A DNA stretch of 64,000 nucleotides from Tubulanus polymorphus. Taxonomy: Eukaryota; Animalia; Nemertea. Shown piece by piece: positions 1 to 35,114 of the stretch (position 1 is its first letter; each line of letters opens with the position of its first letter). A program made the position numbers and the translations under genes. The stretch spans positions 15,438,110 through 15,502,109 of the forward strand of contig NC_134030.1 of NCBI RefSeq assembly GCF_964204645.1, read 5' to 3'. The notes below the pieces were generated by a model. The model was not told the origin of the DNA and did not search any database. It was given only the letters and a program-made list of their open reading frames with translations.

Positions 1-1284
1 TTTTATAAGATATTTCAGAATGCCTTTCTCTTTTTTGTGACGAATCACTCGTTCTACGTAATAGATTGGCTCAACCGGATTCGCAGGCTTATTTTGATCG
101 CCCGGATCATCCGGTGCGAGCACAGGCCTCTCCTCAGGTTTATCCCTGTCCTCCCTGTCAATAGGTGGATTCTCAGGTATGTCGTCCTCAAGCGGCCTAA
201 TGTCCGTTGAAAAGAAATGCTTCATTCTATTACAATGTACTGGGACGGCCAACTCTTGATTCCTCTCATTCTCCAATATGAAAGATACAGAAGAAATCTG
301 TCGGACAATTCGATAAGGGCCCGTCCATTGATGAAGCAATTTCTTACTTAGCCTCTTTATTTTCTTTGGAGTGAATAGCAACACTTGATCACCTACTGCG
401 AAATTTGGAGGAACGGCAGTCCTGTCGAAACGTTCCTTCATCTTCTCCTGCGCCTTTTTGATATTAGCCTTGGCCAACTTTCTGGCCTCTTTCAACTTTG
501 GCAACATTGCTTGGACAAAGCCTCCTGCATCAAAGTAAACGTCCCTCGGATTAAGTAAAGCAACGTCCATCGGCAACCTCGGTTCTCGGCCATACGTGAG
601 GTAGAATGGCGAGTATTGCGACGTATCGGAAGCTGGACTTACCCGATATGCAAATAGAATGGGGTAAAGGTATTCGTCCCAATCGGTTTGGCGTTCATTG
701 CAGTAAATGCTCAGAGCCTTGACAATCACAAGATTCATGTGCTCGACTTGTCCCTGAGTTTGTGGTCTATACGCACTGGACCGTGCCCGTGGCGTATTAC
801 ATAGCCGCGAAACCTCGCTGACTAATTTACTCAGGAAATTTGTTCCGCGATCGCTCTGCAAGACAGAGGGCGCCCCATGGCGATAAATGATTTGTTCATA
901 GAAGATCGTAGCGACCGTCGTGGCTTCTTGATTAGGCATAGCAAAAGCTTCAACCCACTTTGTAAGATAGTCGACAAAGACCAATATGTATTTATTTCCC
1001 GAGTCCGTTGTTGGAAAAGGACCACAGACATCCATTGAGACTCTATCCTACGGCCCTGTGACAGCTATGGGGTTAACCGGGGCCCTAATGGGCTTCCCTG
1101 GCTGATTCTTAGTCGCACAGTCCTTACAGGATTTAATCCAATTTTCAACGTCTCGATACATACCACGCCAGTAATACCTTGCTCGCAAGGTTTCGTAGGT
1201 CCGTTTGTGACCCAAGTGACCGCCAGTCATTGAATCATGACCAGCCTCTAACATTTCCGCATACATTCTTTTAGGTATGACCAA
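1..1284 (-). pseudogene. Gypsy integrase (HHCC zinc finger, DDE core, GPY/F motif) ending in a chromodomain
   Basis: ORF 1048..1284 has H-x6-H...CKDC. Manual translation gives KLLHQWTGPYRIV near 310-345 and YYVERVIRHKKEKGILKYLIK at 1-63, which runs off the window. Confidence 0.9.
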
Positions 1285-1302
1285 CTGACGAGGCCCATCA
1301 GC

Positions 1303-3263
1303 CTATATTTTCTTTTTAGAGTCTACATGGTAAAGAACTCCATCATCATCAACAAAGAAGTAGTCTGACTGCAAGATAATTCTTCGGGCTTCCTTGTCAT
1401 CATCTGGCAAGGTACCATCAAGTAAATAGTCTATAAGACACACTAATTGTAAATCAGACCGCTGGAGCTCGCCCATGTTCACGGGCACAGGCCGTCATTG
1501 TCAGCCTCGAGAGCACACGTGTCAATAGTGTCTTCCATACTATCAGAAATGGGATACGGGCGACGAGAGAGCCCATCGGCGTTCCCGTTTGCCTTGCTGG
1601 ACGATGCGATATGGAGTAGTCAAATTGCTCTAAGTAGAGTGCAATACGGCCAACACGACCCGAAAGTGTTTTCATGGTCTGAAGATACCGTAAGCAACTG
1701 TGGTCTGTGATAATCTCAAAATGATATCCCCGTAAGCAGGGTTCAAACTTTTTGACTCCTGCTGCAACAGCTAAGAGTTCACGGTCCGTTGTAGAATAAG
1801 TTTTCTCCGCTTTATTCAATCCTCGCCCCGCATATGCAATTGCTCTTTCTTGCCCATCCTAGACCTGCGCCAGTACCATGCCGTTACCTTCATCGGAGGC
1901 ATCAGTATATAATAAAAATGGCGATGCCCCATAAATGGGGAAGGCCAATACTGGGGCTTCGAGCATCGCTTGCTTAAGGGTGTCGAAAGCCTGTTGACAA
2001 GAAGCGTCCCATCTATACGGCACGCCTTTCTTAGTCAACTGGTGTAAGGGGGCGGCGATAGAGCTGTAACCTCTACAAAAACGCCGATAATAATTGGTGA
2101 ACCCCAGAAAACTTCGTAGTTCTTTTTAAGTCGTGGGGACAGGCCATTCCTGTACGGCTGCTACCTTTTCCGGGTCAGTAGCGATCCCGTCCTTTGATAT
2201 TCGATGTCCAAGGAAGTCAATGGTTTTGACCGCAAACCGACATTTCTTGGGATTTAGGCGAAGGCCTGACTCACGAAATCGATCGAAAATTTGAGCCAGG
2301 TGAATTAAATGACCATCAAAAGAATTCGAGTAACAGATAATATCGTCCAAATATACTAGACAAAATATCCCAACCAAGTCTCTCAGCAGACCGCCAGTCA
2401 ACCTCTGAAAGGTAGATGGCGCCGATTTCAGACCAAATGGGAGTACCTTAAATTCCAAAAGAGACGAACTGTGTTATAAAAGCAGTCTTATCCCTACTGG
2501 CCTCGTCAACTTCAACTTGCCAGTAGCCACTCAGAAAATCAAGTGAGCTAAAGAATGTAGGTGCCGCTTGACCAACCTGAGCCAAGAGATCATCGATTCT
2601 AGGCAGGGGAAAAGAGTCTGAACGGGTGACAGCATTCAATCCCCGATAGTCAACACAGAATCTCCACTTAACCTCTCCGTCCGGGCTCTTTTTCCGAACG
2701 AGAACGATCGGGGCAGCCCATGGGCTAGTACCATGTACTATCCCCATGTCTAACATTTGTTTGACATGCGTGTCAATAACTTCTTGCATGGCCGGAGAGG
2801 CTCTATAAGGCCTTTTCCGAATTGGGGCCGCGTCCCCTGTGTCAATGACGTGTTTGACTAAGTCAGTTTTACCAAGTTCGTCCGGTGTTCGTGCAAAAAT
2901 GTCCCGATACGATCGTATTAGTTCAAGAAGTTTCGCTTTCTGTGATGGGGAAAGGTCCGAGTCTGACATATCTATTTCCGGTATCCCAATGTCAGCAGAT
3001 GTCTGAGGGTAGTCCACATGAGTGACAGACACCTCTGGAGGTCGGGTCATCTGTCCCGAATTCCCTTCATTCTTCAGGGATTGGTCAAGTGACCACCCAT
3101 CTGTCCATAAGTGGCCAAGACACATATCCTCATAGAGGGTGACATGTCGTGACGCGGGATTCATGACCCGAACTGGAATTCCTGATTGCGTAACGTCGTT
3201 TACTGACCTTGCACTCATAAGATCATGTGCCCTTAATTGATTTGCCGGCTCAAAGACTGCCAC
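1303..3263 (-). pseudogene. Gypsy reverse transcriptase and RNase H, frameshifted
   Basis: SPWAAPIVLV, WRFCVDYRGLN, LDFLSGYWQV, LPFGLKSAPSTFQR, YLDD, DFLGH; RNase H motifs YSTTDRELLA and TDH; split over several ORFs. Confidence 0.95.
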
Positions 3264-3287
3264 CGATGCTTGTGTCCTGTCAATCGA

Positions 3288-4901
3288 TTATTTTCCGTCT
3301 ATGATGACCTCACATGAGGGGGGAATGACAGTCATTCGCGTAACCTTGACGGACGAAGACTTGCCCAAATTGACAGTATTGTTGAAGTAAATTGCATCGG
3401 CCCCTGGTAACAAAAGGGCCTTTCTTGCATAATCAATAACTGCCTGGTTTTGTTCTAAGAAATCAGCTCCAAGAATTACATCGGACGTGATACCGTCTAC
3501 CACGTACATAGAGTGCGTAATTTCCAAATTGCCTAACACAAAATCCACAGAAATAACTCCTCTCAGGTCAAATTTAGTTCCATCTACCCCACGGGCAGAT
3601 TGGAATTGACCCACCTGCAAAGGGCCATTTGACATCTGAGGATGAGTCGTAAAATAATCATTCGATAATACAGAGATTTCGGCGCCCGTGTCGATCAAAA
3701 TACTTAACGGTGTCCCCGAATGGCTACCTGTCACTCGGTTAGCGACAGTTGCCATGATTGACGGGGAATAAACCTCTTGTTCAATAGGAATATTCTGACT
3801 AGAAAGAGACCCTATGTCGTTGGTTGGCGTGTTACCTAAAGTCGTCGTAATAGGTGGAAGTTGTTCCTGACAGTGAATAGTAGGTTGAAACTCGGAGTTC
3901 GAATCTCCTATTCCAACATTGTCGTTGGTTGGCATAATCGGTTTAGACGTTGGGACAACCTGACCTCTGTCCTGTACGTTGGACATTTCATTACCGATTG
4001 GTTGATGAAACCCGCTGGTATTCGAGGTGACAGGACGATCCTGTTCTTTTTCGAATAACTGACAACAATTTTCCGATGTTGACACCTGATTTGATACATT
4101 TGATACGACAGTCTCCGTATCATGATGATCATTACGACATTCCGACCGTGAAATGTTATTACTTAAATCAACTGACACTAGGTCACATTGTACCGCTGAT
4201 TCGGAGGTTACCGGGTACTTATACTGATCAGGAGTGCGTTCGTGACAATTCAATTGAGACTTCTTATCTCTAAAAAGGTCATCTTCTGCCGAATCCGTCG
4301 GACCATTAACCCCTCTAGGGTGTAACCTATCAACACTAATATTGTCACCCGAGCACGCCATATCTGCACGTACCTCCTGCAATTCAACCGGATCGCTAAA
4401 TGTGACCCTCCTGTGTCTTTCTACAGGCTCTCTAGTAACCGACAACTGGGAATTATTCCTCCAGCTGTCCTCAAAATTGGATCCCCGATCCATATAAAAA
4501 TTTCCATCAAACGACAACTGGGTATTGTCCCTCCAGCTGTCCCCAAAGTTACGATCTTGAATGTCATAAACGTCATCGGCACCCCATGAAGGAGTGTAAT
4601 CAATAAACTTATTTAAATGTAAAGGTTCATTGTCATCTAAGTAATCTGCATTACAGTTCCCCTCAGGTTCAAAATAAAGAGAAAATGAGTCAGCTAGCAT
4701 GTTGCCCTGATCAAATGACATGTCGAATATATCATCCCTATCGTCCTCAAAATAATCATCAACATCATCAAAAATATAATCGTCAATTACTGGACTGTCA
4801 TCGTCATATCTATGATATGAATATGAGTCGTCCCACCAAAAATCACTCCTTATCGCCGAATCGGGCGAGGGCTCTGTTGACCATTCATTGCGCGACCCCA
4901 C
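3288..4901 (-). pseudogene. Gypsy aspartic protease preceded by a long acidic/low-complexity linker
   Basis: LIDTGAEISVL and DVILGADFL motifs. The stop at 3288 is in frame with the RT ORF at 3263, so it is a single nonsense codon. Confidence 0.9.
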
Positions 4902-5972
4902 CCTTGTCGGTCTATAGGATGAGGTCTCCTCGTTTCCCTGACTAATGTTCGATTAGCCCCTTGGGAGCCACGCCCAATATTCTGTGGCCGAAAGTGACCC
5001 CTACTAGCATTTTGGGGACGGCGATTATCACGCTGAAATGCGTCCCGGTTTGGTGACCTTTGTTGGTCGTAACGCCACGTCGGGCAATTCCTGGCGTAAT
5101 GACCAGGGGCGTGACATTGAAAGCACGCCACCTGGCCATCCTGTGACCTTTGTGACGGGCGGCTTTCGCTATAAAATGTGGCTCTATCATTCCACTGAGT
5201 AGGGCAGACTTCTGGATGTCCATAATTTGGCGGAACATGTCCCGTAATTCAGCCATAACGTCACCCATCGCTTTATTTGGTTCGGTCCCAATTTGCGATA
5301 CCTTGGGAGACGACAGAGCTTTACGTTGTTCGATATGCTCCGCCATTCTGGCTGCCTCCCATGCATCCCTAAATGTCGTCGGACGCTGTGACAACAGGTA
5401 GACAGAGATGTCAGGGCGAGAGTTGTTAATTAGTAACATCTTTTTCTGGTGGTCCGAAAATTTCAAACTCGAGGCCACACGATCAATCTCTTCCGCAAAC
5501 CTATCGACCGGTTGTGTCTCCCCCTGTCGCATCGTCGTCAAAGCCGACTCCTTGACCAAAGCCCACGAGGTGGGGCTAAATTGCGCGCAAAACGCACGGA
5601 CAATATTTTCCCAGGGAGTGACAACTTTGCCACCGGCCGCATCGGTTCCCTGATCAATGCGGAGGTCATTGAATAGAACTAGGGCTGGGCCAGCCAAAAA
5701 CCAATATAATTGCTTCTTTTTTGCAATTTCGTCCCAGCCCCTCTGAACCAATCAGAGACGCACTGACTATCTCGTCCCGTGAATTTGGGGAGCATAGAAA
5801 AATTCATAAAAGCGGTGGCCGTGTCCACCTGCTCGCGTAGGCCTGAGAGGGCCTCCAGGACCGTGTTATCATTAACGGGGGGATGACCCTGTGGAACCCC
5901 TTCGGCAGGGGGTTGCCCCTGCAAGCCGCCCGCACCGTCCTGCCCGTATGCAGTGCCGCTTCTAGTAGCCAT
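4850..5972 (-). pseudogene. Gypsy gag (capsid and CCHC zinc knuckle), frameshifted
   Basis: MATRSG start, LPKFTG, MRQGETQPVDRFA (major homology region-like), CFQCHAPGHYARNC knuckle; three frames. Confidence 0.88.
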
Positions 5973-6190
5973 AATATTGTTGAAACGGAGTAATTCTAAT
6001 TATATTTAAGTATTTCTATACTACTATGTTAAATACTAAACTCGATCCTGATGATCGGCCCAACAAAGCAGCTGTTTCCAAATGCGGTCAATGTCCGCCA
6101 CAGTCAACTCTTCGTTTGACGACGACAAAAGAATGTCGTCAATCCCCTCAAAATTCCACGAAAAGGAAGGGCTGGGGACAGACTGCTTCT

Positions 6191-6844
6191 CTAAAAATGG
6201 CTTAAACACTGACCAGGTGAAAGATCTAATGGCTGGTCAACCGCAGACACACCCAAGGACAGGTCCAGTGGGAAAATTTGTACAGATGTGCCCAAAGATC
6301 CGCCCAACAATTGCCCAGCTGCAGTTGTGTCAACAGACGATGGTCTATCCGCCAACAATGGGGACAGGTCTAATGGCTGCTCTGTGTCCAATGGACGTTC
6401 GGCATCCCCTGTAGGTGAATCAGGTGGCACCGAACAACAGCACGAAAAACTCGAGCAGCCTGAGGTCGAACCAGCCGATGAAGCCCGCGTGATAAGCCGG
6501 TCAGTCCCTATCGGGCTACCACGGTTCGAATCCGTACCCGATGAATTCAGAGTGGGGAAAGAGGGTGCTGAGGGCGGACAAGTGCACCGTATCCGGTCGT
6601 AAAAGACTGCTAGCGTTGGGCACGTGCAGTATAAACAAGTGTCTTTTAACTCAAAGTCCGTTAGCTGGGAATACGGAGTCCCACTATTGTCCCTAGAAGG
6701 TGACCGTGCTGCAGCTATTGATGTCGGAGCTGCGGGTGTCAAGCGCACCGCAACGAGACACCTCTTTCGGGGTGGGGCACCCAAATAACCAGCGCTACGG
6801 CGTTTGGTTGTAACCCTTACCGTTATCGGCCCCGACATAAACAA
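6191..6844 (-). CDS. Accessory ORF upstream of gag; Cys cluster, basic NLS-like segment and three PLDLS motifs
   Basis: 217-aa open frame with an AT-rich leader; PPRKRC, CLYCTC...CTC, QPLDLS, FPLDLS, QPLDLS and a PLDTE variant near the C-terminus. Confidence 0.65.
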   Translation of the reverse strand: MFMSGPITVRVTTKRRSAGYLGAPPRKRCLVAVRLTPAAPTSIAAARSPSRDNSGTPYSQLTDFELKDTCLYCTCPTLAVFYDRIRCTCPPSAPSFPTLNSSGTDSNRGSPIGTDRLITRASSAGSTSGCSSFSCCCSVPPDSPTGDAERPLDTEQPLDLSPLLADRPSSVDTTAAGQLLGGSLGTSVQIFPLDLSLGVSAVDQPLDLSPGQCLSHF

Positions 6845-6912
6845 TTGATAATAATATTAATAGAAAGAAAATGTATGATCATCAGTGTTAAGCAATCTAG
6901 AATCCCTCAAAG

Positions 6913-7230
6913 TCACTCAAAGTAGCCGTATACCCGCGACCTGTCGGCTACCAATATGTTGTGATCAGGGATATCGCACAAACTAAAATCCCCCTGATCC
7001 CAGAAAGACGTATCGCTATCGGTTAATCCACCGGGTGGAGGGTTCGAATCCCTCACTGGCTGTCCCACAGCCCCGACGGTGGTGGTACCTTTGGTGCTGG
7101 TTGGGTTCGATTCCCACAGCGGCTCCCTTAGATGGGCCGGTATTTCCCACCTAGACTTGGGAGCTGGCGAAAGTGTATGTGTTTTATAAACCGTAGCCCC
7201 GCAGTGACCACACTTCAACCCAACCGACAT
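6913..7230 (-). CDS. Accessory ORF (CxxC plus EPLWESNP), paralog of 7430..7972
   Basis: Likely start MSVGLKCGHCGA after an AT-rich leader; WEIPAHLREPLWESNP matches FEIPEEHREPLWDSNP in the neighbouring ORF. Confidence 0.6.
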   Translation of the reverse strand: MSVGLKCGHCGATVYKTHTLSPAPKSRWEIPAHLREPLWESNPTSTKGTTTVGAVGQPVRDSNPPPGGLTDSDTSFWDQGDFSLCDIPDHNILVADRSRVYGYFE

Positions 7231-7429
7231 ATAAAACAATAGTGAAATATTAAAATAGCAAACCAATTATAAATTAAATTTGGTTGTATAATAATTAAAT
7301 CATTAATCGATAATTAAATACTTAAATGATAATATTAAACCAATTTAAAAATAGTAATAAATAATTAATTAACAATTAAATACTTGAATGATAATATTAA
7401 GAAAATTGACGCCCTCTAGCCAACTCTAT

Positions 7430-7972
7430 TTAAGCTGGGCAAAGAAAATAACCATTCGCGTCTTTATCCCCAAAAATGAAGTCGTTCGGGTTCGCGAAAT
7501 CCCGAAAAAAGTGTACCCAGAACGGGTCGAACTTGTCTGGCACCTTAACCAGCCGTACTCTGCGCCGGCGTTCCGAGGGGTTCAAATCCCCAAAGGTGAC
7601 CAGAGCTGGCGCCTCGTGCTGTGTAGCACGTTGGTTTGGTTCCCACAAGGGCTCAGCGGAGGCGACCGAGGTGAGCGGTGGGTTCGTATCCCACAATAGC
7701 TCCTGATTATCTTCAATCAAACCCAATGCCTTTGGTATCGGTGGGTTAGAATCCCACAAAGGCTCCCGGTGCTCTTCCGGTATTTCGAAAGGCTTAATCG
7801 GTGGGTTCGAATCCCACAATGGTTCCCGATACTCCTCCGGGATCTGAAATGGTCGTGCACGGGGTGGGTTCGAATCCCACAATGCCTGTGTCGGCCTGTT
7901 TACTGGAGTGCGGCGCTTCTTTGAGAAAGCGTTCTTCGCACCACAGTGTGAACAAATAAAAATTCGAACCAT
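7430..7972 (-). CDS. Accessory ORF (CxxC plus tandem EPLWDSNPP repeats)
   Basis: 180-aa ORF MVRIFICSHCGA..., about five 20-21-aa repeats, first substantial ORF after the PBS. Confidence 0.65.
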   Translation of the reverse strand: MVRIFICSHCGAKNAFSKKRRTPVNRPTQALWDSNPPRARPFQIPEEYREPLWDSNPPIKPFEIPEEHREPLWDSNPPIPKALGLIEDNQELLWDTNPPLTSVASAEPLWEPNQRATQHEAPALVTFGDLNPSERRRRVRLVKVPDKFDPFWVHFFRDFANPNDFIFGDKDANGYFLCPA

Positions 7973-8024
7973 TAAAATTAATAAATTTCAAATAATAAAA
8001 GCTTGACACAATAATTAATCAATA

Positions 8025-8038
8025 CGGTTTCGGCACCA
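8025..8038 (-). other. Primer-binding site, tRNA-Phe type
   Basis: Minus strand TGGTGCCGAAACCG one base after the LTR-terminal CA; matches the complement of the tRNA-Phe 3' end (TGGTGCCGAAACCC). Confidence 0.85.
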
Positions 8039-8039
8039 G

Positions 8040-8583
8040 TGATACACCGGTCACAATCCTCTCTTTAATCGTTATCTATAAAATACTTGAGTAAGGCCCT
8101 GGCGAGAGAACGTGTCCGTGCACAAATCCGAATGAATAAATTGAAATAACGGATGATAATATTGAAGATAATATATTTTATTTACCTTGAACAAAGAATG
8201 ATTTTCCTAATCCCTATTGCATATGAATCCCTATCGTTCCGAAGCTTCTCCTGTCCTGCTGTCGACACTCGTCTTACTAAGGTACAGATTCTCCCGATTG
8301 ACTGCTCTCTCAAGATGCGGGTCCCTTTTATAGAAAGAATCGGCATTCTTAAAATACCGACTCTCCCACTCGACTTTTTGGCAAGGAGCAACAACCTTAC
8401 TGTCATGACTGTTTTGGTCATATAGAATTTGGCCTTAATGATTCGCTGATCTAAAATTATTTTCAAAACTGATTTGCTAAACTAACTTTTTCCTTCCAAC
8501 CCTCCTGTCATGACGCGTTGTGATTTACTCACTCCTTGCTAGTCGTTGTTGAGAGAGCAGCTATAGCTCCGTTCCATCTTACA
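8040..8583 (-). repeat. 5' LTR of the Gypsy element (outer boundary tentative)
   Basis: Ends ...GTGTATCA next to the PBS; candidate start TGTAAGATG at 8583; TATAAAAG (~8325-8332) and AATAAA (~8167-8172) in the expected order. The partner LTR is outside the window. Confidence 0.7.
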
Positions 8584-8634
8584 TGATATTGTTGAGTTCT
8601 ATACCAAAATAAAAGTATCCTAATCAACCTACTA

Positions 8635-10569
8635 TTAATTTTTAGTCTCCTTAAGAACGAATAAACAATGTTGAGTTGAATGACGCTTTTTAAAACCGAA
8701 CTGATTGTCGGTGGTAATTAACAGATCCTCACAAATAAATAAAACTATTTTCTCAAACACTTTAGATATGACTGTCACTAAAGCTATGGGCCTGTAATTA
8801 CTAACACTGGACATATCCCCAGTCTTGTTTTTTGGTATTGGATTAATTATAACTTTTGAGAGACGTTGGGGAAAAAACGAGTGTTGTAGCATAAATGTAA
8901 AACACATTGACAGTAATATAACGATAATCGGTGACGCATTTACTAGACTTTCAGCTTGCAAATTATCAATACCTGGAGCTTTTCCAGTTTTAATTGACTT
9001 TATTGCACGATCCACGTCGTGGGGCGAAATCACGAGGTGGTCATCTAAACTAGAAGAGAGAAATTCCTCTACATCTGATCTATTTCTATCATTAGTAACG
9101 GAGTTAAACAATTTCTGATAATGATCTCTCCATAATTCGGTTATTTCCTTATCACCAGTAGCGTGATCGATAGACGTTGATACAGGTGCGCACTTATTAT
9201 TGAAACATTTAACTTTGTTCAAGAATTGACACGGGTCCTTGGCGTATAGGCTATTTGCTAAAGAATCGGATTTAAAAGTTTCCTCCTGTGTCCTACATTT
9301 TCGCAACGCCAGCTTGAAACGCGATCTCAGTAAGCGCATGCGTTGGTATTCATAGCCTTTTTTTGGACTACCGACTGTACGCCATGCCAGGAATGCTTCC
9401 CTGGCACGCTCATGATCTTCTCGCAGTAAGTCGTTCCATCCCGGTATATTGAATTGGTTTTCAGTATGTGCGGTAATGCTCGATATGTCATGTTGCGCAG
9501 ACTGAATTGCGTCAATGATGTTTCCGTAAAAAGTATCAACAGCGATCAAATGAGTAGGATTGGCACAGCTATGGTCTTTACAGCATATTAGTTCTGAAGG
9601 GATTGTGATTGCTGACAGATTGTCGTCTGTTTTAAGTTTATATCGCGAGATTTCAGTATCAGATAGTTTGCCCCATCGAACACAACGGTTCGTTGACCCA
9701 TCTGTTTTCGTCGATGGAATTTGTTTGACTTTTTTTGACAGCGAAAGCTCGAAACACAGGGGTCTATGATCGGAGATAATATATTGATATTTAACTTCGT
9801 ACTTTGTTATTTTTCGATAAATCTGATAACTAGTCAGAATGTGATCCAGCCATGATGTTGTTCCATGCGCATCACTAATAAACGTATAGGTATCTGGTGA
9901 GAGATTTTCTAGGTCGGCAGAAATAAGACTGTGATCCTCGGTAAAGCGTCGGAGAATATTTCCAAAGTTGGCAGACGGTGACGCGTTAAAGTCTCCCATT
10001 ACCAAGAAATGAGCGCATGTTGATTCGTCGATTATACTTTTAATTTTACACAGATAATCTTTAAATAGCGGCACGTTTTCGACAGTATCGGTCGGCAGGT
10101 AGACACAAAGAATGAGGATGTCTCCACCTGCGTCGTTAAGTTTGATTCCGATAATTTTCGGATCACCATATGATATTCGATGTATTTTCGGAGTTAGACA
10201 TTTGCGCCATAGAAAGGCTGTGCCGCCGTATGGACGGCCAACCAAAATATCACGAGAAGTATCGACTGCAGATTCCCCAAAATGAGTGAAATTGGGGTGG
10301 ACCTTGTCCATGAAATTAAGATCTTGGGGTAAAAGCCAGTGTTCTTGAAGAAGAACGATATCACTTTCGTTACAAAGTTTGTTTACATCTAAGATGTTGT
10401 TTTTCAGAGAGTGACAGTTGAGCGTCGCTATTCTAATTGTGTTCGTACCAGTCGTTGTCGTATCGTTCATATTGCTGTCCATATTGGTGATCATACCTGT
10501 GTTCATCATCTGACATTTCATAGCCTTGCCACCACGCGTCTCTGTTTTCTGTTTTCTGTAGTTGTACAT
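8635..10569 (-). pseudogene. LINE ORF2 (APE endonuclease and N-terminal part of RT), 3'-truncated
   Basis: IATLNC, LLQEHW, GRPYGG, CVYLP, GDFNA, WLDHI, SDHRP; RT motifs KAPGID, NYRPIAL, SKVFEK, QFGF. Ends before the catalytic YxDD motif. Confidence 0.93.
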
Positions 10570-10588
10570 CTCTGTCTTGTCTCGGTTT

Positions 10589-11704
10589 TCAAAATCTTTT
10601 TATGAATGTATATTGCGGCCACATTTCAAGGTTCGTGACCTGTTCGTAATTCCCGCCAGGTATTTTAACCCTGAAGGAGGAGTAAGTATCATATTTGGTC
10701 TTAAGTTTTGTGCACCAAGAATTAATGCCGCACTGTTCCCGTATGTGGTTCGAGACATCATCGGCCGTAGTTCCAGGTCGCAAGCGGGTGATAAACAGCT
10801 CGACTGGGGGCTTTGCGCGGTGCACTCCCTGTATCTTAAAGCTCTTCTCAGTTTTTTTCGGATGATTCGATTTTCGACGCTGGCGATTAACTTCAGTCCA
10901 AGGGGTTGCTTCATCGTCAGTGTGAGGATCAGTCTGCCCATGTTTAACGACATCGCTATAAGTAAGACCGGCAGCAAAGTCTTGCAGGTTCGATTGATTC
11001 GGCACAGGGAATGACTGTGGCCGAAATTCGGGAGGTTATCTTACAGTTGTGCTTTCTAACGTTTTCGTATCCGGAAGACTAACAGTCGCACTGCATTGGA
11101 CCGTAGTCTCTGGTGTGAGTACTGGCATATCATGATCTGGAATAATAACAGTTTTGTTGTGGTTCTCTACAGCACTTATATCAGCATTCATACTGGTCAG
11201 TTGGAGTTGGAGCGAAGTTATAGTCTTTTGAAGGTCTTTCATTTGTTGTGATAGCGAAGAGACGTCCGTGTGACGTCCATCTAGTTTTGGTAGTTTAAGT
11301 CGCTCACTGAGGAAACTCGGTAGAATATTTTTATCAGTCGATACAATCAGTAGAAACATATCTTCTAGATTTTTAAGGGACTTATTCGGGCCCTGGCGTT
11401 TCCTAATTCGCGTTTCCGCTGGGTCAGTTTCACAGACTTTTAATAGAATCGATTTTGCTAGTTCAATCTCAGTATCCGAAAAAGAATCGACGCACATTTT
11501 GACCAATACGTCCTGTTTGAATGTGTCAAGGTTATTGTAGAGAAAGCATAACAGATCATTTACTATAATGTTTCCGGTCCTAATATTGTTGCATAGGTGA
11601 CATGAGTGCGTGTCATTGTTCCGCAGTTCAGCAGATTCTTCTTGCCCGTTTGGACAGGGGCAGTTAAGAATTGCTGCATTGCCGTTGCAGGTAACAGTTG
11701 TCAT
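10589..11704 (-). pseudogene. LINE ORF1 (CR1/L2-group type) with one in-frame stop at 11036
   Basis: SFSDTEIELAKSIL...RKRQG motif, coiled coil, RRM-like ELFITRL...YSSFRV...WP...IKRF. The two ORFs are in frame and lie directly upstream of ORF2. Confidence 0.85.
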
Positions 11705-20415: not shown

Positions 20416-21189
20416 CTATCTACACTGTAAATTACTTTTTTAAATCATGATCAGGCATACAATAACCGACCGGGTGTTTGAACTTTTCCGAATCACAAAA
20501 TCACAATCGGTTGGAAATACGCTGATTAATAAAATTTACTGACGGGACATTCTACCGCTATAATGAAGCTATTTCTCAGTGCGTTTAGCCCGTTCGCGGT
20601 TTTGAATGCGTTATCCTCTTAATTGTTAGGACTAATATTTTACATCCATATGTATAAATAGTAGTGTAGCCATGGAACGACCCTATGATGGCACGAAAAA
20701 AAACAATGTAGTGTTATCTAACCGTCAATCATTACGTCGTATAGTTTTAAAAGTTGGACCGTTCCGTCTATCTCAATTGCAAATTTTATATATTTTTTTT
20801 GCATACATTTGGCTACTAATTGTTTAAGTGACTTGATCGAATTCGGCGATATTCGAACACCGTAACAGACCGGGCAGCTATATAAATGAACTGATTACAA
20901 ATTTTATTGCGATTTACAAAATGACGGAGAAACATCATGCTTTAGCGTAAGTTATAAAATGTTATGGCCCTCTCTTAAAGAGAATTCAAATTTAAAGAGA
21001 GAAGGTGTCCGCAGAATATCTAAAATATTTATTCCCTGTATTTCCAGTCATTATACGACTTTCTTTGTTTGTGCGTTTATTTCTTTTAAAAATAATACTC
21101 ATTATCCCGGGAGTCGGACAATATTACAAATGGCGTCCCTATCGATAAGAACTTATGCATGCACGTCATCAACCATTTTTTTGTAAGAT

Positions 21190-23280
21190 AAATGGCATCT
21201 GCAATTATAACTAGTATAGGATTGGCAATTGTTAACGCTTTAGCATTTAAAGGTCGTGGTTATTTATTTAAACATATTGATAAAAATGGTTCATTAACCG
21301 AGCAAAAAGACATAATTAATTAGAAAAATATAATAAAGCAGCAGAAGAATGTAGAGAAAAAAGACAAAATTATTGAGATTATATTAGTAAAGAATTATAG
21401 AATCAGAAAATTTCACATAGAGACTTCATCAGTTGATGAAGCGATGAGTTTATAAAATCAATATTTAAATCAGTAACAAATCGTGAAAAATTACATTTGT
21501 ACGAACCTAAATTATCAGATTATTATACACTGAGTAAAGAAAAACAACAATATGAAATAATTTGGATTTTAGGTGGAACAATTATTGTTATATTTGTTGC
21601 TTATAAATTTACTAATAAGTAATTTTTTTCACAATATAAATGGAAGATAAAATTGATGGGGTTAATATTATTCCTCATGATATAGATAAATCTAAATTAA
21701 AATCATATTTAGAAAAACAAATATTAGAATTTGAAATACATTTGAAAGTTAAAAAGAGAAAATATTTAAAAAGTAAAATTATATATTATTTCATTATTAG
21801 TGATTCTGTTACAGTTAGTTCTGTATTAACATTTTTAGCAATACTCAGTCCATTAACACATTAGGTACATCAATTGGCGTTTTAGGTTTAGGTTCTAGTG
21901 TTTTAATCGGAATAAGTTCAAAAATTAAGCATAAAAAGTAATAAAGAAAAAATAAAATCTGATATAAAAGAAATTAATGAATAAGAAAATGCATTAGATT
22001 ATATAATTAGTTTAAATTGAAATATAACAATTGAAGAACACGATAAATTATTTAAAGAATTAATTAATTATTGACTTTTTTATTATATAAATGGTAGATA
22101 ATGTTTATTATGCAACAACAGGATGTGGAAGAAGTTGGAATAATCATTTAAGTAAATTAGATGAAAATTTAAATTATTCCGATTTGAAATGATTTCATAC
22201 ATATTTTCAAATCAGAATTATTTTAAATGACTTAGAATGTCCCTTACAGGGATCAAAATATTTTAATGAAATAAATAACGATATTAACCTAAGTTTGATA
22301 AAATATGTAATGAATATAATATAAATATAAATAATTTTGATTTAAAGCTCATGGTAAATTGCATGGTGTTGGTGAACAGAATGAAATAATGAGTATCAAT
22401 TATATGCACGTCATAATTATAAAATTGATAATGATAATGGTTGGATTAATTGTATTTTAGAAAATAGTGAAGGTTTTACAAAATCGGGCATACAGCGAAT
22501 AAAGCAATCTATTAGAATATATCTTATTTGCATATTAACTAATTTGTATACTAATTTGTATATTAGGATCACAATTTTAAAGATCACCAATAGTTGGAAA
22601 TAATAATACCTCATTTGATACAAAAACACAATTTGAAATTCTATTTGAAGATGCAATTCATAATGATAAAAATATATCAATTCCAGAAAATATAGTAAGA
22701 TATCAAAATTGTTTAGATAAATCTCATGTAAGATTAAATTATTGTATAGGGCTTAATCCATTAATTATATCTAATGATTTAGTTTTGAAAATAGAAAATA
22801 TGATTGGGTATAATAATTTGATTAAGACTGCCGGAATGAATAATAAATTTGGATTAAATTATATTAATAAAAATACTGCTCCGAAATTAATGGAAGAAAA
22901 TAAAAACGTATTCAATCAACTGAAATTAAAACTCAAAATAACAAATTAAATGATAATAATTTTAAACCAGATTGTAATACTACAGAAAATAATAAAACTG
23001 ATAATATTTAGCAAAAGTTAACTTAAGAAATTAGAAAAAGTATGATATTCCAAGAGTATGAATTCAAACAGAAAATCAAAATAGATTCAGATCGAAGCTA
23101 ATAATGCAATAATAACTAATGCCGCGGATAATTTAATCAAAACGATCTATGGAAGTAAATATAAAATTCCATTAGACTTTGATTTAATAAGTAATAATGC
23201 ACCTTTATAAAAATATGTAATTCAAGAAGATATTATATTTAAAATAACTTTTGCAACTGTGAATAAAGTTTTATTAGCAT
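21190..23280 (+). mobile_element. Degraded relic of the AT-rich Polinton-like family, ending in a major capsid-like fragment
   Basis: Colinear, diverged homology to 26517-28700 (same MASAII, MEDK and CATTGCG genes). 23100-23260 translates to IYGSKYKIPLDFDLI...IIFKITF, which resembles Polinton MCP. Confidence 0.8.
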
Positions 23281-24332
23281 TGGTTGACGTATATGACGTC
23301 ATGCCAATGCTAGTAAAATGGATCAGAAATAGTAGTACGAAAAAATAGCGCCGACTCTTCTCATTTTCATAGTAACTTCAAACTGTCACTCCGTTCACGT
23401 AAAACATTAGAAACAGCTGAAAATGATTAAAAATGTTTCAATTATTCCCCACAACATAGCGTCGCCAGATTTCTGATTTAATGGTCCAAAAAATTATTCG
23501 ATCGCATTTTTCTCGTTCATTATCTGGTAGATGAGAGCGGGTTAAACAATCGCGTTGCGATATGTCCGCATTGACATTGGAAGTAAAGAATGGGGAACAG
23601 CCTGTTCTGAATAGAAAAAGATAAAATTACGCACTCGGCAGAGATTCGCTTTGTAATGCGCGCCGGGAAAAATACCTTTTATTATCTTTTCCATGCGTTA
23701 AACCACAGCGATTGAATTTACGCGTTGTTTGTCGTAAATTGCAATATTGCGATGGTTATTTGCCACTGCTGTAGTTTTTTGGAATTGAATCGAGCGGCCT
23801 CGGTAGCTCAATGAGATAAGGCGTGATGCTGTTGAATCCACTATCAATGCTGAGTGACAAGTGGGTCCGAGTCCTGCTGGCTGCGAACAGTTTGCGGGCA
23901 ACACTTCAAAGGCCGTACCGTATTGAGGTTAAATGAACAATCCAATAGGAATAGTCTTGGGAAACCAAGATCCAAACGACGTACGTAAAGCCAAACAAAC
24001 AAAAAGACAAACAAACAATCATCAGCCGGCCTCAGTGACACCAACGCCAGCATCGCTCTCTGCGACGTTTTGCATGCGTACATGCGGGTCTTGCAATTTC
24101 ATTCAGAAAAATCGTTCTGTTTTTGTTTTCATTATTCAGTGGGGCCTAACAGTTCATGCGTAAAATTCCTGCCAGTCGGCCATCTTGATTCTGACAGGGC
24201 CAGTTTTTGGGCTGAAGATGTTGTCTAGGGTAGATACATGTATAAACCAAATATCAAGACATTACCTTGAAGCGTCTTCAAAACTTCCCAAAATAACTGG
24301 ATTCCGTCTACGGACGGACGGACGGACGGACG

Positions 24333-24454
24333 AGTAATAGGGGTTTAGTTGTTCTATACCAAAGGTCGAAGGGTCGAAAAATAAATTCTCGCACACTCGA
24401 AATTATTTTTCGACCATTCAACCTTTGTTATAGAACAACTAAACCCCTATTACT
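24333..24454. repeat. 122-bp imperfect palindrome at the probable left end
   Basis: AGTAATAGGGGTTTAGTTGTTCTATA... pairs with ...TATAGAACAACTAAACCCCTATTACT over ~52 bp with few mismatches. Confidence 0.9.
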
Positions 24455-24550
24455 TCTATATAATCACGAGTTTCATAAATTTACAAGCATCAACACGCTG
24501 AGTATTGCGTAATACATGTTGATTCTAGATGGATGGTTCTAGAAAACTAC

Positions 24551-24720
24551 ATTAGCCAATCACAGTTGAGTATTACTCTAGCCAATCACAGTTGAGTATT
24601 CCCTATTACTCTATCCAATCACAGTTGAGTATTCCCTATTACTCTAGCCATCATTAGCCATCATAATTTACAAGCCTCAACACGCAGCTGGGTTTTCCCC
24701 ACTATTGAGTAGTATAAAAA
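24551..24720 (+). promoter_or_regulatory. Tandem CCAAT-containing repeats followed by a TATA box
   Basis: CCAATCACAGTTGAGTATT three times, TATAAAAA at ~24713, disrupted ORF starting at 24811. Confidence 0.55.
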
Positions 24721-25176
24721 CGACGCACACGTGGTAGGCTTATACGTGGCGGCGGGACGCGTTGAGAGTTAAGTGTTATATTCAATTTGAATAAAAAATT
24801 TGATATTAAAATGGAGAGTAAACAAGTACACAGTGAGAACAACAAATCATTCTTAGATCATAAAAGATACTTCAAATGCTAAATCAGTAGATTATAAATT
24901 CAAAAAGTTAACAGAATTAACAATTCATAAGAAATATCTAATTACAAATATTGATACAGTTACTAATAGATATGGAGATAAATTAGTTATCCACTTAGAA
25001 TATGAAGGATTAAAAGGAAATAAATATAAATTCAGAACATATTTACCAGATAGATTGCATAGATTATCAAGTGAAGATTTAGAAGAATTATGTTCTGGTG
25101 ATTTCTATTTCATATATAAGGGTAAGAATGAAAAAGGGCACCATGAAATAGATTTCGAATAAAATATGTAAAATAA

Positions 25177-27395: not shown

Positions 27396-27412
27396 ATTTT
27401 TTTATTATATAA

Positions 27413-28793: not shown

Positions 28794-28810
28794 AATTTTC
28801 TATTATATAA

Positions 28811-31023: not shown

Positions 31024-31029
31024 TTATTA

Positions 31030-32066: not shown

Positions 32067-32068
32067 CT

Positions 32069-33156: not shown

Positions 33157-33162
33157 CTTATT

Positions 33163-35086: not shown

Positions 35087-35114
35087 TTATAATATAGATT
35101 TTAATCAAAATTGA

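What the first reader, a model, noticed from the sequence alone, without database searches (positions are those of the whole stretch)
6521..7880. Array of tRNA T-arm/B-box hairpins with covarying stems in the retrotransposon leader
Seen on the + strand (antisense to gag-pol): stem-TTCGAAT-like loop-stem units at 6521 (ACGG/CCGT), 7038 (GAGGG/CCCTC), 7102 (TGGG/CCCA), 7577 (GGGG/CCCC), and 7678, 7741, 7801, 7864 (GTGGG/CCCAC). A longer-loop variant sits at 7485 (TTCGGG/CCCGAA) and an outlier in pol at 3894 (GGAG/CTCC). Stems differ in sequence but keep pairing, which a peptide repeat alone does not require. Known: this is the tRNA T-arm and the TFIIIC B-box consensus (GGTTCGANTCC). Inference: dual-coding DNA that could recruit TFIIIC as an insulator or Pol III antisense promoter, or let the genomic RNA pair with tRNA T-arms for primer capture, packaging or sponging of tRNA fragments.
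Basis: partly seen in the sequence, partly recalled or inferred. Interest (0 to 1): 0.8.

Follow-up and report, generated by a model that had tools for sequence, protein, structure and literature searches.

The report
Codon-embedded T-arm-like hairpins in retrotransposon leader
A broken gypsy-type retrotransposon carries, between its tRNA primer site and gag, small genes for a repeated peptide whose codons also keep a row of short hairpins that look like the T arm of tRNA; the double constraint is real, but its purpose is untested.

Summary
Nine hairpins with a stem of at least 4 bp and a TTCGAAT-like loop lie on the + strand at the stated coordinates. Eight cluster in 6521-7880, against about 1 expected per strand. 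They are not tRNAs or SINEs: there is no cloverleaf, no A box and no terminator.

A 13-nt tRNA-Phe primer binding site at 8038-8026 (minus strand) places the array in the PBS-to-gag leader of a degenerate chromovirus. The leader holds three ORFs. ORF A and ORF B are paralogues encoding the repeat (R)EPLW(D/E)SNP(P). Differences between units fall mainly on third codon positions (pN/pS 0.2-0.3), so the peptide is under selection.

The stems are kept beyond what the peptide requires. The flanking codons are reverse complements (TGG/CCA, GGG/CCC, CGG/CCG, AGG/CCT, ACG/CGT), and Asn is always AAC against a 29% background. An exact synonymous-recoding null gives P of about 1e-7 to 5e-5.

The covarying outer pairs lie outside the B-box, and the primer's own T arm does not match. 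My best reading, at modest confidence, is a stem-loop array on the genomic RNA in the usual packaging/dimerisation position. TFIIIC binding and a neutral palindrome-preserving process remain open. No related copy could be retrieved.

The parts
8040..8626 (-). Probable 5' LTR of the Ty3/gypsy (chromovirus) element. The end at 8040 (...GTGTATCA) is well placed. The start is uncertain: TGAT at 8626 or TGT at 8583.
   Evidence: The LINE ORF2 reverse transcriptase breaks off at about 8640 with no continuation in any frame. The LTR-type ...CA end lies one base before the PBS. The 3' LTR is off the window, so the LTR pair could not be compared.
8026..8038 (-). Primer binding site, TGGTGCCGAAACC, complementary to the 3' end of tRNA-Phe(GAA).
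   Evidence: It is the only occurrence in the window, with 0.002 expected by chance. It is identical to the first 13 nt of the oligonucleotide used to capture Drosophila tRNA-Phe (PMC7038984). The same string is used for human tRNA-Phe probes.
7430..7972 (-). ORF A, 180 aa, the first ORF after the PBS. It starts M-x5-C-x-H-C-G-A and has five in-frame (R)EPLW(D/E)SNP(P) units every 20-21 aa, then FGDLNPS and FRDFANPN variants. It ends in GYF.
   Evidence: No relatives were found in the word search, in 1.84 billion representatives (one spurious satellite hit), in Pfam or in PDB. The single-sequence AF2 model has mean pLDDT 46, i.e. low confidence.
7864..7880 (-). Unit U1 hairpin, GTGGG/CCCAC, sense loop AUUCGAA (LWDSNPP).
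7801..7817 (-). Unit U2 hairpin, GTGGG/CCCAC (LWDSNPP).
7741..7757 (-). Unit U3 hairpin, GTGGG/CCCAC. The + strand loop is TTAGAAT, a change at T-loop position 56 (Ser codon TCT).
7678..7694 (-). Unit U4 hairpin, GTGGG/CCCAC. The + strand loop is TTCGTAT, a change at position 58 (LWDTNPP).
7630..7646 (-). Unit U5, degenerate (LWEPNQR). Only 2 bp pair; peptide and hairpin are lost together.
7577..7591 (-). Unit U6 hairpin, GGGG/CCCC (FGDLNPS). Trp TGG has become Gly GGG, with Pro CCA changed to CCC.
7485..7506 (-). Unit U7, long-loop variant TTCGGG/CCCGAA (FRDFANPN). The flanking codons are Arg CGG and Pro CCG. The loop core UUCGCGAA is self-complementary.
   Evidence: It is a marginal hit to the array model (E=8.7).
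7231..7429 (-). AT-rich spacer between ORF A and ORF B, with a 62-nt internal duplication (7288-7407). It carries the motif AATATTATCAT-YAAGTATTTAATT, parts of which recur before each leader ORF and gag.
6913..7230 (-). ORF B (ATG 7230; 105 aa from that ATG), a paralogue of ORF A. It shares the M-x5-C-x-H-C-G-A start, IP..REPLWESNP, VRDSNPP, FW, and a GYF ending.
   Evidence: Pairwise blastp of A against B gives E=1e-9.
7102..7116 (-). Unit U8 hairpin, TGGG/CCCA (LWESNPT).
7038..7054 (-). Unit U9 hairpin, GAGGG/CCCTC (VRDSNPP). Trp TGG has become Arg AGG, compensated by the synonymous change Pro CCA to CCT.
6191..6838 (-). ORF C (ATG 6838; 215 aa). It holds one hairpin unit and a separate in-frame repeat [EQ]PLDLSP / FPLDLSL that has synonymous variation and no hairpin (6209-6406).
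   Evidence: PLDLS is the CtBP-binding motif (PMC2749851).
6521..6535 (-). Unit U10 hairpin, ACGG/CCGT (GTDSNRG). A fifth pair is U.G on the sense strand only (6520-6536).
   Evidence: The peptide flanks are not conserved, so membership rests on the hairpin alone (ascertainment caveat).
1..5972 (-). Degenerate gag-pol of the same element. The gag ATG is at 5972. It includes a CCHC knuckle piece (5131-4850), protease (within 4901-3288), RT (3263-2126), RNase H (1819-1454), and integrase with the start of a chromodomain running off the window. It is broken into several frames, and the integrase has in-frame stops.
   Evidence: Pfam hits; translations.
3894..3908 (-). Isolated GGAG/CTCC hairpin in pol (GDSNSE). 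It is probably chance.

Best explanation
What is shown. The array is the nucleotide face of an in-frame 20-21-aa peptide repeat, (R)EPLW(D/E)SNP(P). The repeat is encoded by two paralogous small ORFs that lie between the tRNA-Phe primer binding site and gag of a degenerate chromovirus-type LTR retrotransposon. Two constraints overlap. The peptide is kept: substitutions between units fall on third codon positions. Independently, the codon before Asp/Glu and the codon after Asn are kept as reverse complements of each other, and Asn stays AAC. Each unit therefore retains a 4-5 bp stem closing a loop built on UUCGAA.

What is inferred. The hairpins most likely act on the sense (genomic) RNA as a reiterated cis element in the PBS-to-gag interval. 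This is where retroviruses and LTR retrotransposons usually place their packaging and dimer-linkage stem-loops. The self-complementary loop could support loop-loop kissing between genomes or units, or binding by the CCHC nucleocapsid of Gag. On this reading, the likeness to the tRNA T arm / B-box is either a by-product of Trp-Asp-Ser-Asn-Pro codons plus a palindromic loop, or a trace of a tRNA-related origin. It is not the working feature.
For: Position:
- The PBS is at 8038-8026, the gag ATG is at 5972, and the array spans 7880-6521 on the same strand.

Coding:
- pN/pS is 0.2-0.3 with pS 0.66-0.83 in the minus frame, and about 1 or more in four of the five other frames. The exception is the antisense frame that shares the minus frame's third codon positions, where it is 0.24-0.9.
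- 26 of 48 differences between units fall on third codon positions, P=0.002.
- ORF A and ORF B are paralogues, E=1e-9.

Pairing beyond the peptide:
- Under an exact synonymous-recoding null with local codon usage, 8 of 9 units have at least 4 bp against 0.55 expected (P=8e-11).
- Counting U1-U4 once gives 5 of 6 against 0.26 expected (P=9e-8).
- Dropping U10 as well gives about 5e-6, and treating U2 and U8 as one gives about 5e-5. These two figures are my products of the per-unit probabilities.
- Asn is AAC in all units against a 29% background. Asp is GAT in 8 of 8 family units (also in U7 and the pol outlier) against 48%.
- The flanking codon pairs are TGG/CCA, GGG/CCC, CGG/CCG, AGG/CCT and ACG/CGT.
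- 93% of cells are paired, 3 of 5 pairs show double changes, and the covariation score is 0.367 against 0.097 in shuffles, reached by 0 of 500.

Strand hints:
- The extra U.G pair in U10 and the G.U self-pairing of the U6 loop work only on the sense strand (reading).
- The sense fold has z=-3.0; the antisense fold has z=-1.1.

Loop:
- The third base of the Ser-position codon is G in 8 of 10 units, even where the residue changes (ACG Thr, TTG Leu). Asp GAT keeps the first U of UUCGAA, which a B-box (N at that position) would not require.

Gag:
- Gag has a CX2CX4HX4C knuckle.
Against: - There is only one, degenerate, copy. No other copy or relative could be fetched, so all covariation comes from paralogous units inside one locus. 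These share ancestry and may exchange sequence.
- The stems are short. In the minimum-free-energy fold of the region only some form, and neighbouring units can pair with each other instead.
- Four of ten loops are not fully self-complementary.
- An exact 11-nt match to the universal T-arm/B-box consensus is an unlikely coincidence for an unrelated hairpin, and this explanation does not use it.
- No binding, dimerisation or packaging data exist.
Confidence: 0.4

Rival explanations
1. Neutral by-product. The peptide repeat is the only selected feature. The palindrome is maintained by mutation rather than selection, for example by short-tract gene conversion among units plus hairpin-templated (quasi-palindrome) correction, which copies a change in one arm into the other.
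For: - The W-type units share one core, so the conservation of CCA and AAC could be homogenisation (U2-U4 pS is only 0.17).
- Comparing stem with non-stem synonymous sites among the five W units is not significant on its own (0 of 3 variable against 4 of 5; my count, Fisher about 0.07).
- The peptide motif can be conserved without any hairpin: PLDLSP in ORF C.
- The copy is dead.
Against: - Three family units with a changed first base at the Trp position (U6, U7, U9) each carry the matching Pro third base, about 0.01 by chance.
- AAC is kept in every unit, including diverged ones, against a 71% AAT background.
- Flanking synonymous sites in the same units are near saturation.
- Templated correction is known mainly as a rare mutational event, not as a mechanism that would maintain ten units.
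Confidence: 0.25
2. DNA-level array of B-boxes. The units recruit TFIIIC without Pol III (extra-TFIIIC-like sites). They would act as a boundary or insulator that shields the provirus, in the way the Su(Hw) site array in the leader of Drosophila gypsy does.
For: - Four exact and four one-mismatch matches to GGTTCGAATCC lie within 1.36 kb.
- The two inner G-C pairs (tRNA 52-53/61-62) are invariant in all nine aligned units.
- There is no A box and no terminator, as expected for B-box-only sites.
- A leader position for an insulator array has a precedent in gypsy (general knowledge).
Against: - Covariation occurs in the outer stem pairs, which are not part of the B-box.
- Asp GAT is invariant at the position the consensus leaves free.
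- Units at 7741 and 7678 change C56 and A58, positions that are critical in B-boxes.
- No occupancy data exist.
- Whether the host's TFIIIC recognises this consensus is assumed.
Confidence: 0.15
3. Intermolecular pairing with tRNA. The sense RNA units are 17-nt complements of T arms of cellular tRNAs with a GTGGG/CCCAC-type arm. They would capture tRNAs or tRNA fragments for packaging, priming help or decoy.
For: - The orientation is that of a PBS: tRNA-sense on the strand opposite the element.
- Units complementary to real T arms would automatically be hairpins with different but paired stems.
- Retroviral leaders are known to contact the T-psi-C arm of their primer (general knowledge: RSV U5-T-psi-C, HIV-1 PAS).
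Against: - The element's own primer is tRNA-Phe, whose T arm does not match the array.
- The acceptor/CCA complement is absent, so 3' tRNA fragments would not pair.
- m1A58 and the folded T arm hinder such pairing (general knowledge).
- No host tRNA set was available to test for matches.
Confidence: 0.08
4. Decayed tRNA genes or a tRNA-derived SINE or minisatellite lying antisense in the leader, with the minus-strand ORF incidental.
For: T-arm-bearing tandem arrays do exist as non-coding repeats. For example, metagenome contig L025 has 8 copies of a 58-nt unit with the same GTGGGTTCGAATCCCAC arm.
Against: - ARAGORN finds 0 tRNAs, and Rfam matches only T-arm-sized fragments.
- There is no A box.
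- Spacings of 63/60/63 nt keep the frame.
- Substitutions are biased to third positions and pN/pS is low in the minus frame.
- Sequence next to the arm does not form an acceptor stem (read).
Confidence: 0.03
5. Antisense Pol III promoter, or T-arm mimic on an antisense transcript: a substrate for T-arm enzymes such as the Psi55 or m1A58 writers.
For: The + strand carries GUUCNANNC-type T loops in stem-loops.
Against: - There is no A box or upstream element, and terminators are scarce.
- The antisense fold is not unusually stable, z=-1.1.
- There is no evidence of antisense transcription.
- The wobble pairs favour the sense strand.
Confidence: 0.03

Closest known systems
Packaging (Psi) and dimer-linkage stem-loops in retroviral and LTR-retrotransposon leaders, such as the HIV-1 DIS hairpin with a 6-nt palindromic loop and the MoMLV DIS-1/2 and GACG hairpins
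   Same: It lies on the genomic strand between the PBS and gag. It consists of several short stem-loops with a conserved, partly self-complementary loop and variable but paired stems. Gag has a CCHC knuckle.
   Different: There are eight to ten reiterated copies rather than a few distinct hairpins. They sit inside translated-looking ORFs and in phase with a peptide repeat. The loop and inner stem equal the tRNA T-arm consensus on the opposite strand. No functional data exist.
Extra-TFIIIC (ETC) sites / B-box-only boundary elements, and the Su(Hw) insulator array in the Drosophila gypsy leader
   Same: It is a cluster of consensus B-boxes without an A box or a Pol III gene. It is an array of reiterated sites in the 5' leader of a gypsy-type element.
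   Different: Conservation extends to stem pairs outside the B-box. The sites lie inside coding sequence. Binding is untested.
tRNA T arm (positions 49-65) and tRNA-derived SINE or minisatellite arrays
   Same: It has a 5-bp stem with G53-C61 and a TTCGAAT loop, identical to common T arms. Tandem arrays of such units occur elsewhere (L025).
   Different: There is no cloverleaf, A box, acceptor stem or terminator. The unit length is a multiple of three with a coding substitution pattern. Two units break T-loop invariants.
Reiterated packaging stem-loops inside coding regions of RNA viruses, such as the alphavirus nsP1/nsP2 GGG-loop hairpins (general knowledge)
   Same: It is an array of short hairpins with a shared loop motif superimposed on an ORF through the choice of synonymous codons.
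   Different: The replicon type is different. Here each hairpin coincides with one copy of a peptide repeat.
Extra ORFs upstream of gag in some Ty3/gypsy lineages, such as plant Ogre ORF1 (general knowledge), and PxDLS (CtBP-binding) motif arrays in viral and cellular repressors
   Same: There are additional lineage-specific ORFs between the PBS and gag. ORF C has three PLDLS motifs.
   Different: There is no sequence similarity to any known protein. Expression and partners are unknown.

Membership tests
tRNA gene / tRNA-derived SINE | Cloverleaf detectable by tRNA finders or the Rfam tRNA model | tested here: not met
   ARAGORN finds 0 genes in the window. Rfam gives no tRNA hit at E<=1 over 64 kb, and only T-arm-sized tmRNA/plastid-hairpin fragments at E<=10 over 1.6 kb.
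tRNA gene / tRNA-derived SINE | A box 30-60 nt upstream of the B box, and an oligo-T terminator | tested here: not met
   The best A-box matches have 2-5 mismatches, the same as at random positions. There are two T4 runs in 6400-8050.
tRNA gene / tRNA-derived SINE | T arm / B box GGTTCGANTCC | tested here: met
   Four exact and four one-mismatch matches; hairpins.
Extra-TFIIIC (B-box-only) site array | Consensus B-box without an associated Pol III gene | tested here: met
Extra-TFIIIC (B-box-only) site array | Constraint confined to the B-box core, with no need for stem complementarity outside 52-62 | tested here: not met
   The outer pairs covary: UA, AU and GC at one pair, GC and CG at another. 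Two units alter C56 or A58.
Extra-TFIIIC (B-box-only) site array | TFIIIC occupancy in vivo | not testable with these tools
   Needs ChIP or CUT&RUN in the host.
Retroelement leader cis-acting RNA (Psi / dimer linkage) | Located on the genomic strand between the PBS and gag (or early gag) | tested here: met
   PBS at 8038-8026, array at 7880-6521, gag ATG at 5972.
Retroelement leader cis-acting RNA (Psi / dimer linkage) | Stem-loops supported by covariation | tested here: inconclusive
   Support is strong among paralogous units within one locus. No orthologous or independent copies were available.
Retroelement leader cis-acting RNA (Psi / dimer linkage) | Self-complementary loop able to kiss | tested here: inconclusive
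   UUCGAA or an equivalent is present in 6 of 10 units and broken in U3, U4, U5 and U8 (read). No dimerisation assay was possible.
Retroelement leader cis-acting RNA (Psi / dimer linkage) | Binding by Gag/NC and requirement for packaging | not testable with these tools
   Experimental.
Ty3/gypsy chromovirus | gag, protease, RT, RNase H and integrase in that order, with a C-terminal chromodomain | tested here: met
   Pfam hits for Retrotrans_gag, aspartyl protease, RVT_1 and RT_RNaseH. The integrase and the start of a chromodomain-like tail were read in translation; that domain itself was not scanned against Pfam.
Ty3/gypsy chromovirus | Paired LTRs with a target-site duplication | not testable with these tools
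   The 3' end lies outside the window. Only the 5' LTR end next to the PBS is seen.
Primer binding site | A TGG-initiated complement of a tRNA 3' end, 0-3 nt after the LTR end ...CA | tested here: met
   A 13-nt identity to the tRNA-Phe probe, unique in the window, preceded by ...ATCA-C.
CtBP-binding PxDLS motif protein (ORF C) | PLDLS-type motif | tested here: met
   Three PLDLS plus one PLDT, in frame, with synonymous variation. The motif definition is from PMC2749851. Binding was not tested.

The most novel reading that the evidence does not exclude
A retrotransposon has evolved leader genes whose repeat peptide is encoded so that every repeat is also a functional tRNA T-arm/B-box. The array would recruit TFIIIC as a self-carried insulator, a Pol III-factor analogue of the gypsy Su(Hw) array, or would act as a T-arm decoy or complement engaging the tRNA machinery. 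That would make it a protein-coding repeat and a tRNA-mimicking nucleic-acid array in the same bases.
Probability: 0.12. Interest if true: 0.85.

Novelty: new variant of a known kind. Interest (0 to 1): 0.55.

Why it matters
If the hairpins work, this would be a compact example of overlapping codes. A short linear peptide motif and a reiterated nucleic-acid element would occupy the same 15-17 bases, with the amino acid at one position (Trp/Arg/Gly/Thr) yielding to base pairing. It would give a testable candidate for the little-known packaging or dimerisation signals of Ty3/gypsy elements in animals. Alternatively, it would be a first case of a retrotransposon carrying its own B-box array. It also flags an uncharacterised set of leader ORFs: two Cys-x-His-Cys proteins with the PLWDSNP repeat, and one with three CtBP-type PLDLS motifs. 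These have no relatives in very large protein collections.

Tried and rejected
- **Whole tRNA, tmRNA or SINE.** ARAGORN and Rfam were negative.
- **Relatives of ORF A.** Nothing was found in the word search, the full representative search (one spurious satellite translation, P0001), Pfam, PDB, metagenome contigs or viral contigs.
- **Relatives of gag and of the 537-aa gag-protease piece.** These were sought to fetch sister elements with their leaders. All searches were empty. The pieces were searched apart, not read through stops.
- **Exact-protein look-ups for ORF A, the LINE ORF2 and a second gypsy ORF.** None is on record. Only the Polinton polB ORF is, which identified the source record.
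- **Papers on the assembly or record.** None found. Papers on WDSNP were irrelevant. Papers on B-boxes in LTR elements held nothing pertinent.
- **DNA scan of metagenome contigs for two identical T arms 55-70 nt apart.** The hits are bacterial tRNA genes with duplicated 3' halves, plus a few SINE-like arrays. None is related to the window.
- **Other copies in the window.** None by blastn, tblastn or the covariance model.
- **Pseudo-PBS reading.** I checked whether each unit is preceded by TGG-N-acceptor complement. It is rejected: the triplet is CGG, CAG or AGG, and the spacing is wrong in U9 (read).
- **Acceptor-like or minihelix extension of the stems on either strand.** No pairing (read).
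- **AT-rich spacers as introns joining ORFs A, B and C.** No conserved GT donor exists before the stops, and joining shifts the frame (read).
- **Antisense overlapping ORF as the source of the synonymous constraint.** The + frames carry stops across the array.
- **Structure prediction of ORF A.** Confidence was low, so no fold search was run.
Full report
**1. What is in the sequence**

I scanned the window for a 7-nt loop within one mismatch of TTCGAAT closed by at least four Watson-Crick pairs.
- 3894
- 6521
- 7038
- 7102
- 7577
- 7678
- 7741
- 7801
- 7864

The minus strand has none. A first-order Markov null gives about one such site per strand per 64 kb, with a maximum of 3. The 11-mer GGTTCGAATCC with up to one mismatch occurs eight times in 6523-7877. 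The whole window is expected to hold 1.1.

The long-loop variant at 7485-7506 is present. A tenth, degenerate unit without a hairpin lies at 7630-7646. A covariance model built from nine units finds no further unit anywhere in the window. It scores the pol site at 3894 at E=1.6, which is chance level. The pol outlier should be dropped.

**2. Not tRNAs and not a SINE**

- ARAGORN finds no tRNA in the window.
- Rfam gives no tRNA hit. In a sensitive scan of 6400-8000, only T-arm-sized fragments match tmRNA or a plastid hairpin.
- A-box matches upstream of each B-box have 2-5 mismatches, the same as at random positions.
- The + strand has only two T4 runs in 6400-8050.
- The bases flanking the arms do not form an acceptor stem on either strand (read).

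**3. Context**

The minus strand of 1-5972 is a degenerate Ty3/gypsy element. It has gag, a CCHC knuckle, aspartyl protease, RT, RNase H, integrase, and the start of a chromodomain-like tail at the window edge. It is broken into several frames, and the integrase has in-frame stops.

Upstream on the same strand, a LINE ORF2 (endonuclease plus RT) stops abruptly inside its RT at about 8640. The LTR element therefore appears to have inserted there.

At 8038-8026 the minus strand reads TGGTGCCGAAACC, one base after ...GTGTATCA. This 13-mer is unique in the window, with 0.002 expected by chance. It is identical to the start of the oligonucleotide used to capture Drosophila tRNA-Phe(GAA) by its 3' end (PMC7038984). 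The same string is used in human tRNA-Phe probes. I take it as the primer binding site.

On that basis:
- The 5' LTR is roughly 8626-8040, with an uncertain start.
- The 2.05 kb from 8025 to 5973 is the PBS-to-gag leader.

The window comes from NCBI assembly GCA_964204645.2, record OZ123231.1, a 23-Mb chromosome. The tools did not name the organism. I do not take the contig for human. It is dense in LINE, gypsy and Polinton sequences of invertebrate type.

**4. The leader is not empty**

The leader holds three ORFs on the element's strand. Each is preceded by an AT-rich spacer carrying variants of AATATTAT(CAT).

- **ORF A** (7972-7430, 180 aa) and **ORF B** (7230-6913) are paralogues, with pairwise blastp E=1e-9. 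Both start M-x5-C-x-H-C-G-A, share IP..REPLW(D/E)SNP, and end in GYF.
- **ORF C** (6838-6191) is not detectably related to them. It carries its own in-frame repeat: ERPLDT, EQPLDLSP, FPLDLSL and DQPLDLSP.

ORF A has no relative in any search:
- the word-indexed search;
- 1.84 billion cluster representatives, where the only hit is a translated satellite;
- Pfam;
- PDB;
- metagenome or viral contigs.

The single-sequence AlphaFold model has mean pLDDT 46. That fits a disordered array of short linear motifs.

**5. The peptide is under selection**

- Between repeat units and between the two paralogues, the minus frame has pN/pS of 0.2-0.3, with pS 0.66-0.83.
- Four of the five other frames give about 1 or more. 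The exception is the antisense frame that shares third positions, an expected artefact.
- 26 of 48 differences between units fall on third codon positions (P=0.002). The short strings in that script were copied from the output.
- In REPL the Pro codon is CCA, CCT, CCC or CCG in different units, Glu is GAA or GAG, and Leu is TTG or CTG.
- Unit spacings of 63, 60 and 63 nt keep the frame.

**6. Pairing exceeds what the peptide requires**

In the sense strand each unit reads [pre][X][Asp/Glu][Ser][Asn][Y][post]. The five stem pairs, from the loop outward, are:

| Pair | 5' base | 3' base |
|---|---|---|
| 1 | Asp/Glu position 1 | Asn position 3 |
| 2 | X position 3 | Y position 1 |
| 3 | X position 2 | Y position 2 |
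| 4 | X position 1 | Y position 3 |
| 5 | pre position 3 | post position 1 |

The observed X/Y codon pairs are:

| X/Y codons | Units |
|---|---|
| TGG/CCA | U1-U4, U8 |
| GGG/CCC | U6 |
| CGG/CCG | U7 |
| AGG/CCT | U9 |
| ACG/CGT | U10 |
| TGG/CAA | U5, the only exception; its peptide is also degenerate |

Where Trp is replaced by Gly or Arg, the synonymous third base of Pro changes to match.

Codon choice is skewed in the same direction. Asn is AAC in every unit, although the element's ORFs use AAT 71% of the time. Asp is GAT in 8 of 8 family units against a 48% background.

I enumerated all synonymous recodings weighted by local codon usage. Each peptide has a 0-10% chance of a stem of at least 4 bp.

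| Unit set | Observed with ≥4 bp | Expected | P |
|---|---|---|---|
| All 9 family units | 8 of 9 | 0.55 | 8e-11 |
| U1-U4 counted once | 5 of 6 | 0.26 | 9e-8 |
| Also dropping U10 (found by its hairpin) | – | – | about 5e-6 |
| Also merging U2 and U8 | – | – | about 5e-5 |

The last two figures are my own products of the per-unit values.

On the 9-unit alignment, 93% of cells pair and three of five pairs show double changes. The covariation score is 0.367 against 0.097 in column shuffles, reached by 0 of 500. All slid registers score lower.

Caveats:
- The units are paralogues in one locus.
- The structure was derived from these same sequences.
- A test restricted to the five Trp units is not significant alone (stem against non-stem synonymous sites, about 0.07).
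- The covariation-only evidence from U6, U7 and U9 is about 0.01.

**7. What this says about the proposed functions**

*B-box / TFIIIC.*
- The consensus match is real. The inner two G-C pairs are invariant.
- A B-box spans only tRNA positions 52-62, so it does not need the outer pairs that covary.
- It leaves position 59 free, yet Asp is always GAT.
- Units at 7741 and 7678 change C56 and A58.
- TFIIIC binding remains possible as an effect, but it does not account for the pattern.

*Antisense Pol III unit.* There is no A box and terminators are scarce.

*Primer T-arm capture.* The primer is tRNA-Phe, whose T arm differs from all array stems.

*Sponge for 3' tRNA fragments.* The acceptor/CCA complement is absent.

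*RNA hairpin on the sense strand.*
- This reading fits the outer-pair covariation.
- It fits the extra U.G pair in U10 and the G.U-dependent self-pairing of the U6 loop, both valid only on the sense strand.
- It fits the more unusual stability of the sense fold: z=-3.0 against -1.1 for the antisense fold.
- The loop core UUCGAA is self-complementary. The enlarged loop of U7 (UUCGCGAA) keeps that property, and the invariant GAT supplies its first U.
- The PBS-to-gag interval is where retroviral packaging and dimer-linkage hairpins are found.
- I therefore favour a reiterated cis-acting stem-loop array on the genomic RNA, acting through kissing or nucleocapsid binding, at confidence about 0.4.
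- Against it: in the minimum-free-energy folds only some unit hairpins form, and adjacent units can pair with each other. The evidence is suggestive only.

**8. Rivals**

- **Neutral by-product (0.25).** A palindrome-preserving mutational process (conversion among units plus quasi-palindrome correction) acting on a selected peptide repeat cannot be excluded with one copy.
- **B-box array acting on DNA (0.15).** This has the gypsy Su(Hw) leader insulator as a functional precedent.
- **Pairing with cellular tRNAs (0.08).**
- **Decayed SINE (0.03).** T-arm minisatellites do exist. Metagenome contig L025 carries eight 58-nt copies with the same arm at 95% identity, and that period is not a multiple of three. 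They show what a non-coding version looks like, and the window's array differs from it.
- **Antisense Pol III or T-arm-enzyme substrate (0.03).**

**9. Limits**

- All three word searches and the single representative search are spent.
- No sister element or second copy was retrievable. None exists in the window.
- The decisive comparison is the set of copies of this leader across the source assembly, and it could not be run here.
The intron reading of the AT-rich spacers was rejected by inspection only.

**10. Verdict**

This is a real and statistically well-supported overlap of a peptide repeat with a T-arm-like hairpin array in the leader of a chromovirus. Its mechanism is unproven. I rate it a new variant of a known kind, with interest 0.55.

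Noticed in passing
window 6209-6406 (minus strand, ORF C 6838-6191): ORF C carries three in-frame PLDLS motifs (EQPLDLSP, FPLDLSL, DQPLDLSP) plus ERPLDT. They show synonymous codon differences and no hairpin. PLDLS is the classical CtBP co-repressor binding motif, so this leader ORF may engage host CtBP.
   Followed up: partly
window 8026-8038 (minus strand): A 13-nt primer binding site complementary to the tRNA-Phe 3' end lies one base after an LTR-type ...CA end. It fixes the 5' LTR end at 8040.
   Followed up: yes
window 8153-8166, 7388-7401, 7326-7339, 6848-6861, 5975-5990: An AT-rich motif, AATATTAT(CAT), is often followed by YAAGTATTTAATT. It recurs in the LTR and before each leader ORF and gag. 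Spacer 7288-7407 is a 62-nt tandem duplication. Its role (initiation context, promoter or processing signal) is unknown.
   Followed up: partly
window 8635-11704 (minus strand): A LINE with an ORF1-like ORF (11704-11036) and an ORF2 (endonuclease plus the start of RT, 10569-8635). It is cut off inside RT at about 8640, apparently by the insertion of the LTR element.
   Followed up: partly
window 4437-4550 (minus strand, within ORF 4901-3288): An in-frame 72-nt-spaced repeat (about 86% identity over 42 nt) in the acidic region between gag and protease. It encodes NFGDSWR.N.QLS-type units.
   Followed up: no
window 55222-58896 (minus strand): Two adjacent ORFs (509 and 683 aa) match protein-primed type B DNA polymerase (PF03175), indicating a Polinton/Maverick-type element. 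The 509-aa ORF is on record in NCBI GCA_964204645.2, OZ123231.1, which identified the source of the window.
   Followed up: partly
window 36111-38120 (+ strand): A second, unrelated Ty3/gypsy fragment: a 669-aa ORF with an integrase C-terminal SH3, then RT and RNase H, suggesting nested or rearranged copies. It has no T-arm array.
   Followed up: no
window 21000-36000: A 15-kb block of 20-27% GC with strong GC and AT skew that flips sign at about 31.2 kb. Imperfect inverted repeats lie there (31066-31182/31338-31454 and 31370-31431/31462-31523), with weak miRNA-precursor-like Rfam hits. It looks like two divergently oriented AT-rich units.
   Followed up: partly
L025:3986-4450 (metagenome contig Ga0123355_10082858); also L001, L003, L010, L031: Non-coding tandem arrays (periods 58-70 nt) of units holding the same GTGGGTTCGAATCCCAC T arm. 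Some follow a tRNA-like head that ARAGORN does not call. They are probably tRNA-derived SINE or minisatellite DNA of a host organism in these metagenomes.
   Followed up: partly
L004-L042 (many, e.g. L005, L009, L022, L034): Bacterial tRNA genes (for example tRNA-Leu in L005 and L022) followed 55-70 nt later by a duplicated 3' half of the same tRNA. This is the usual footprint of integrative elements at tRNA attachment sites.
   Followed up: no
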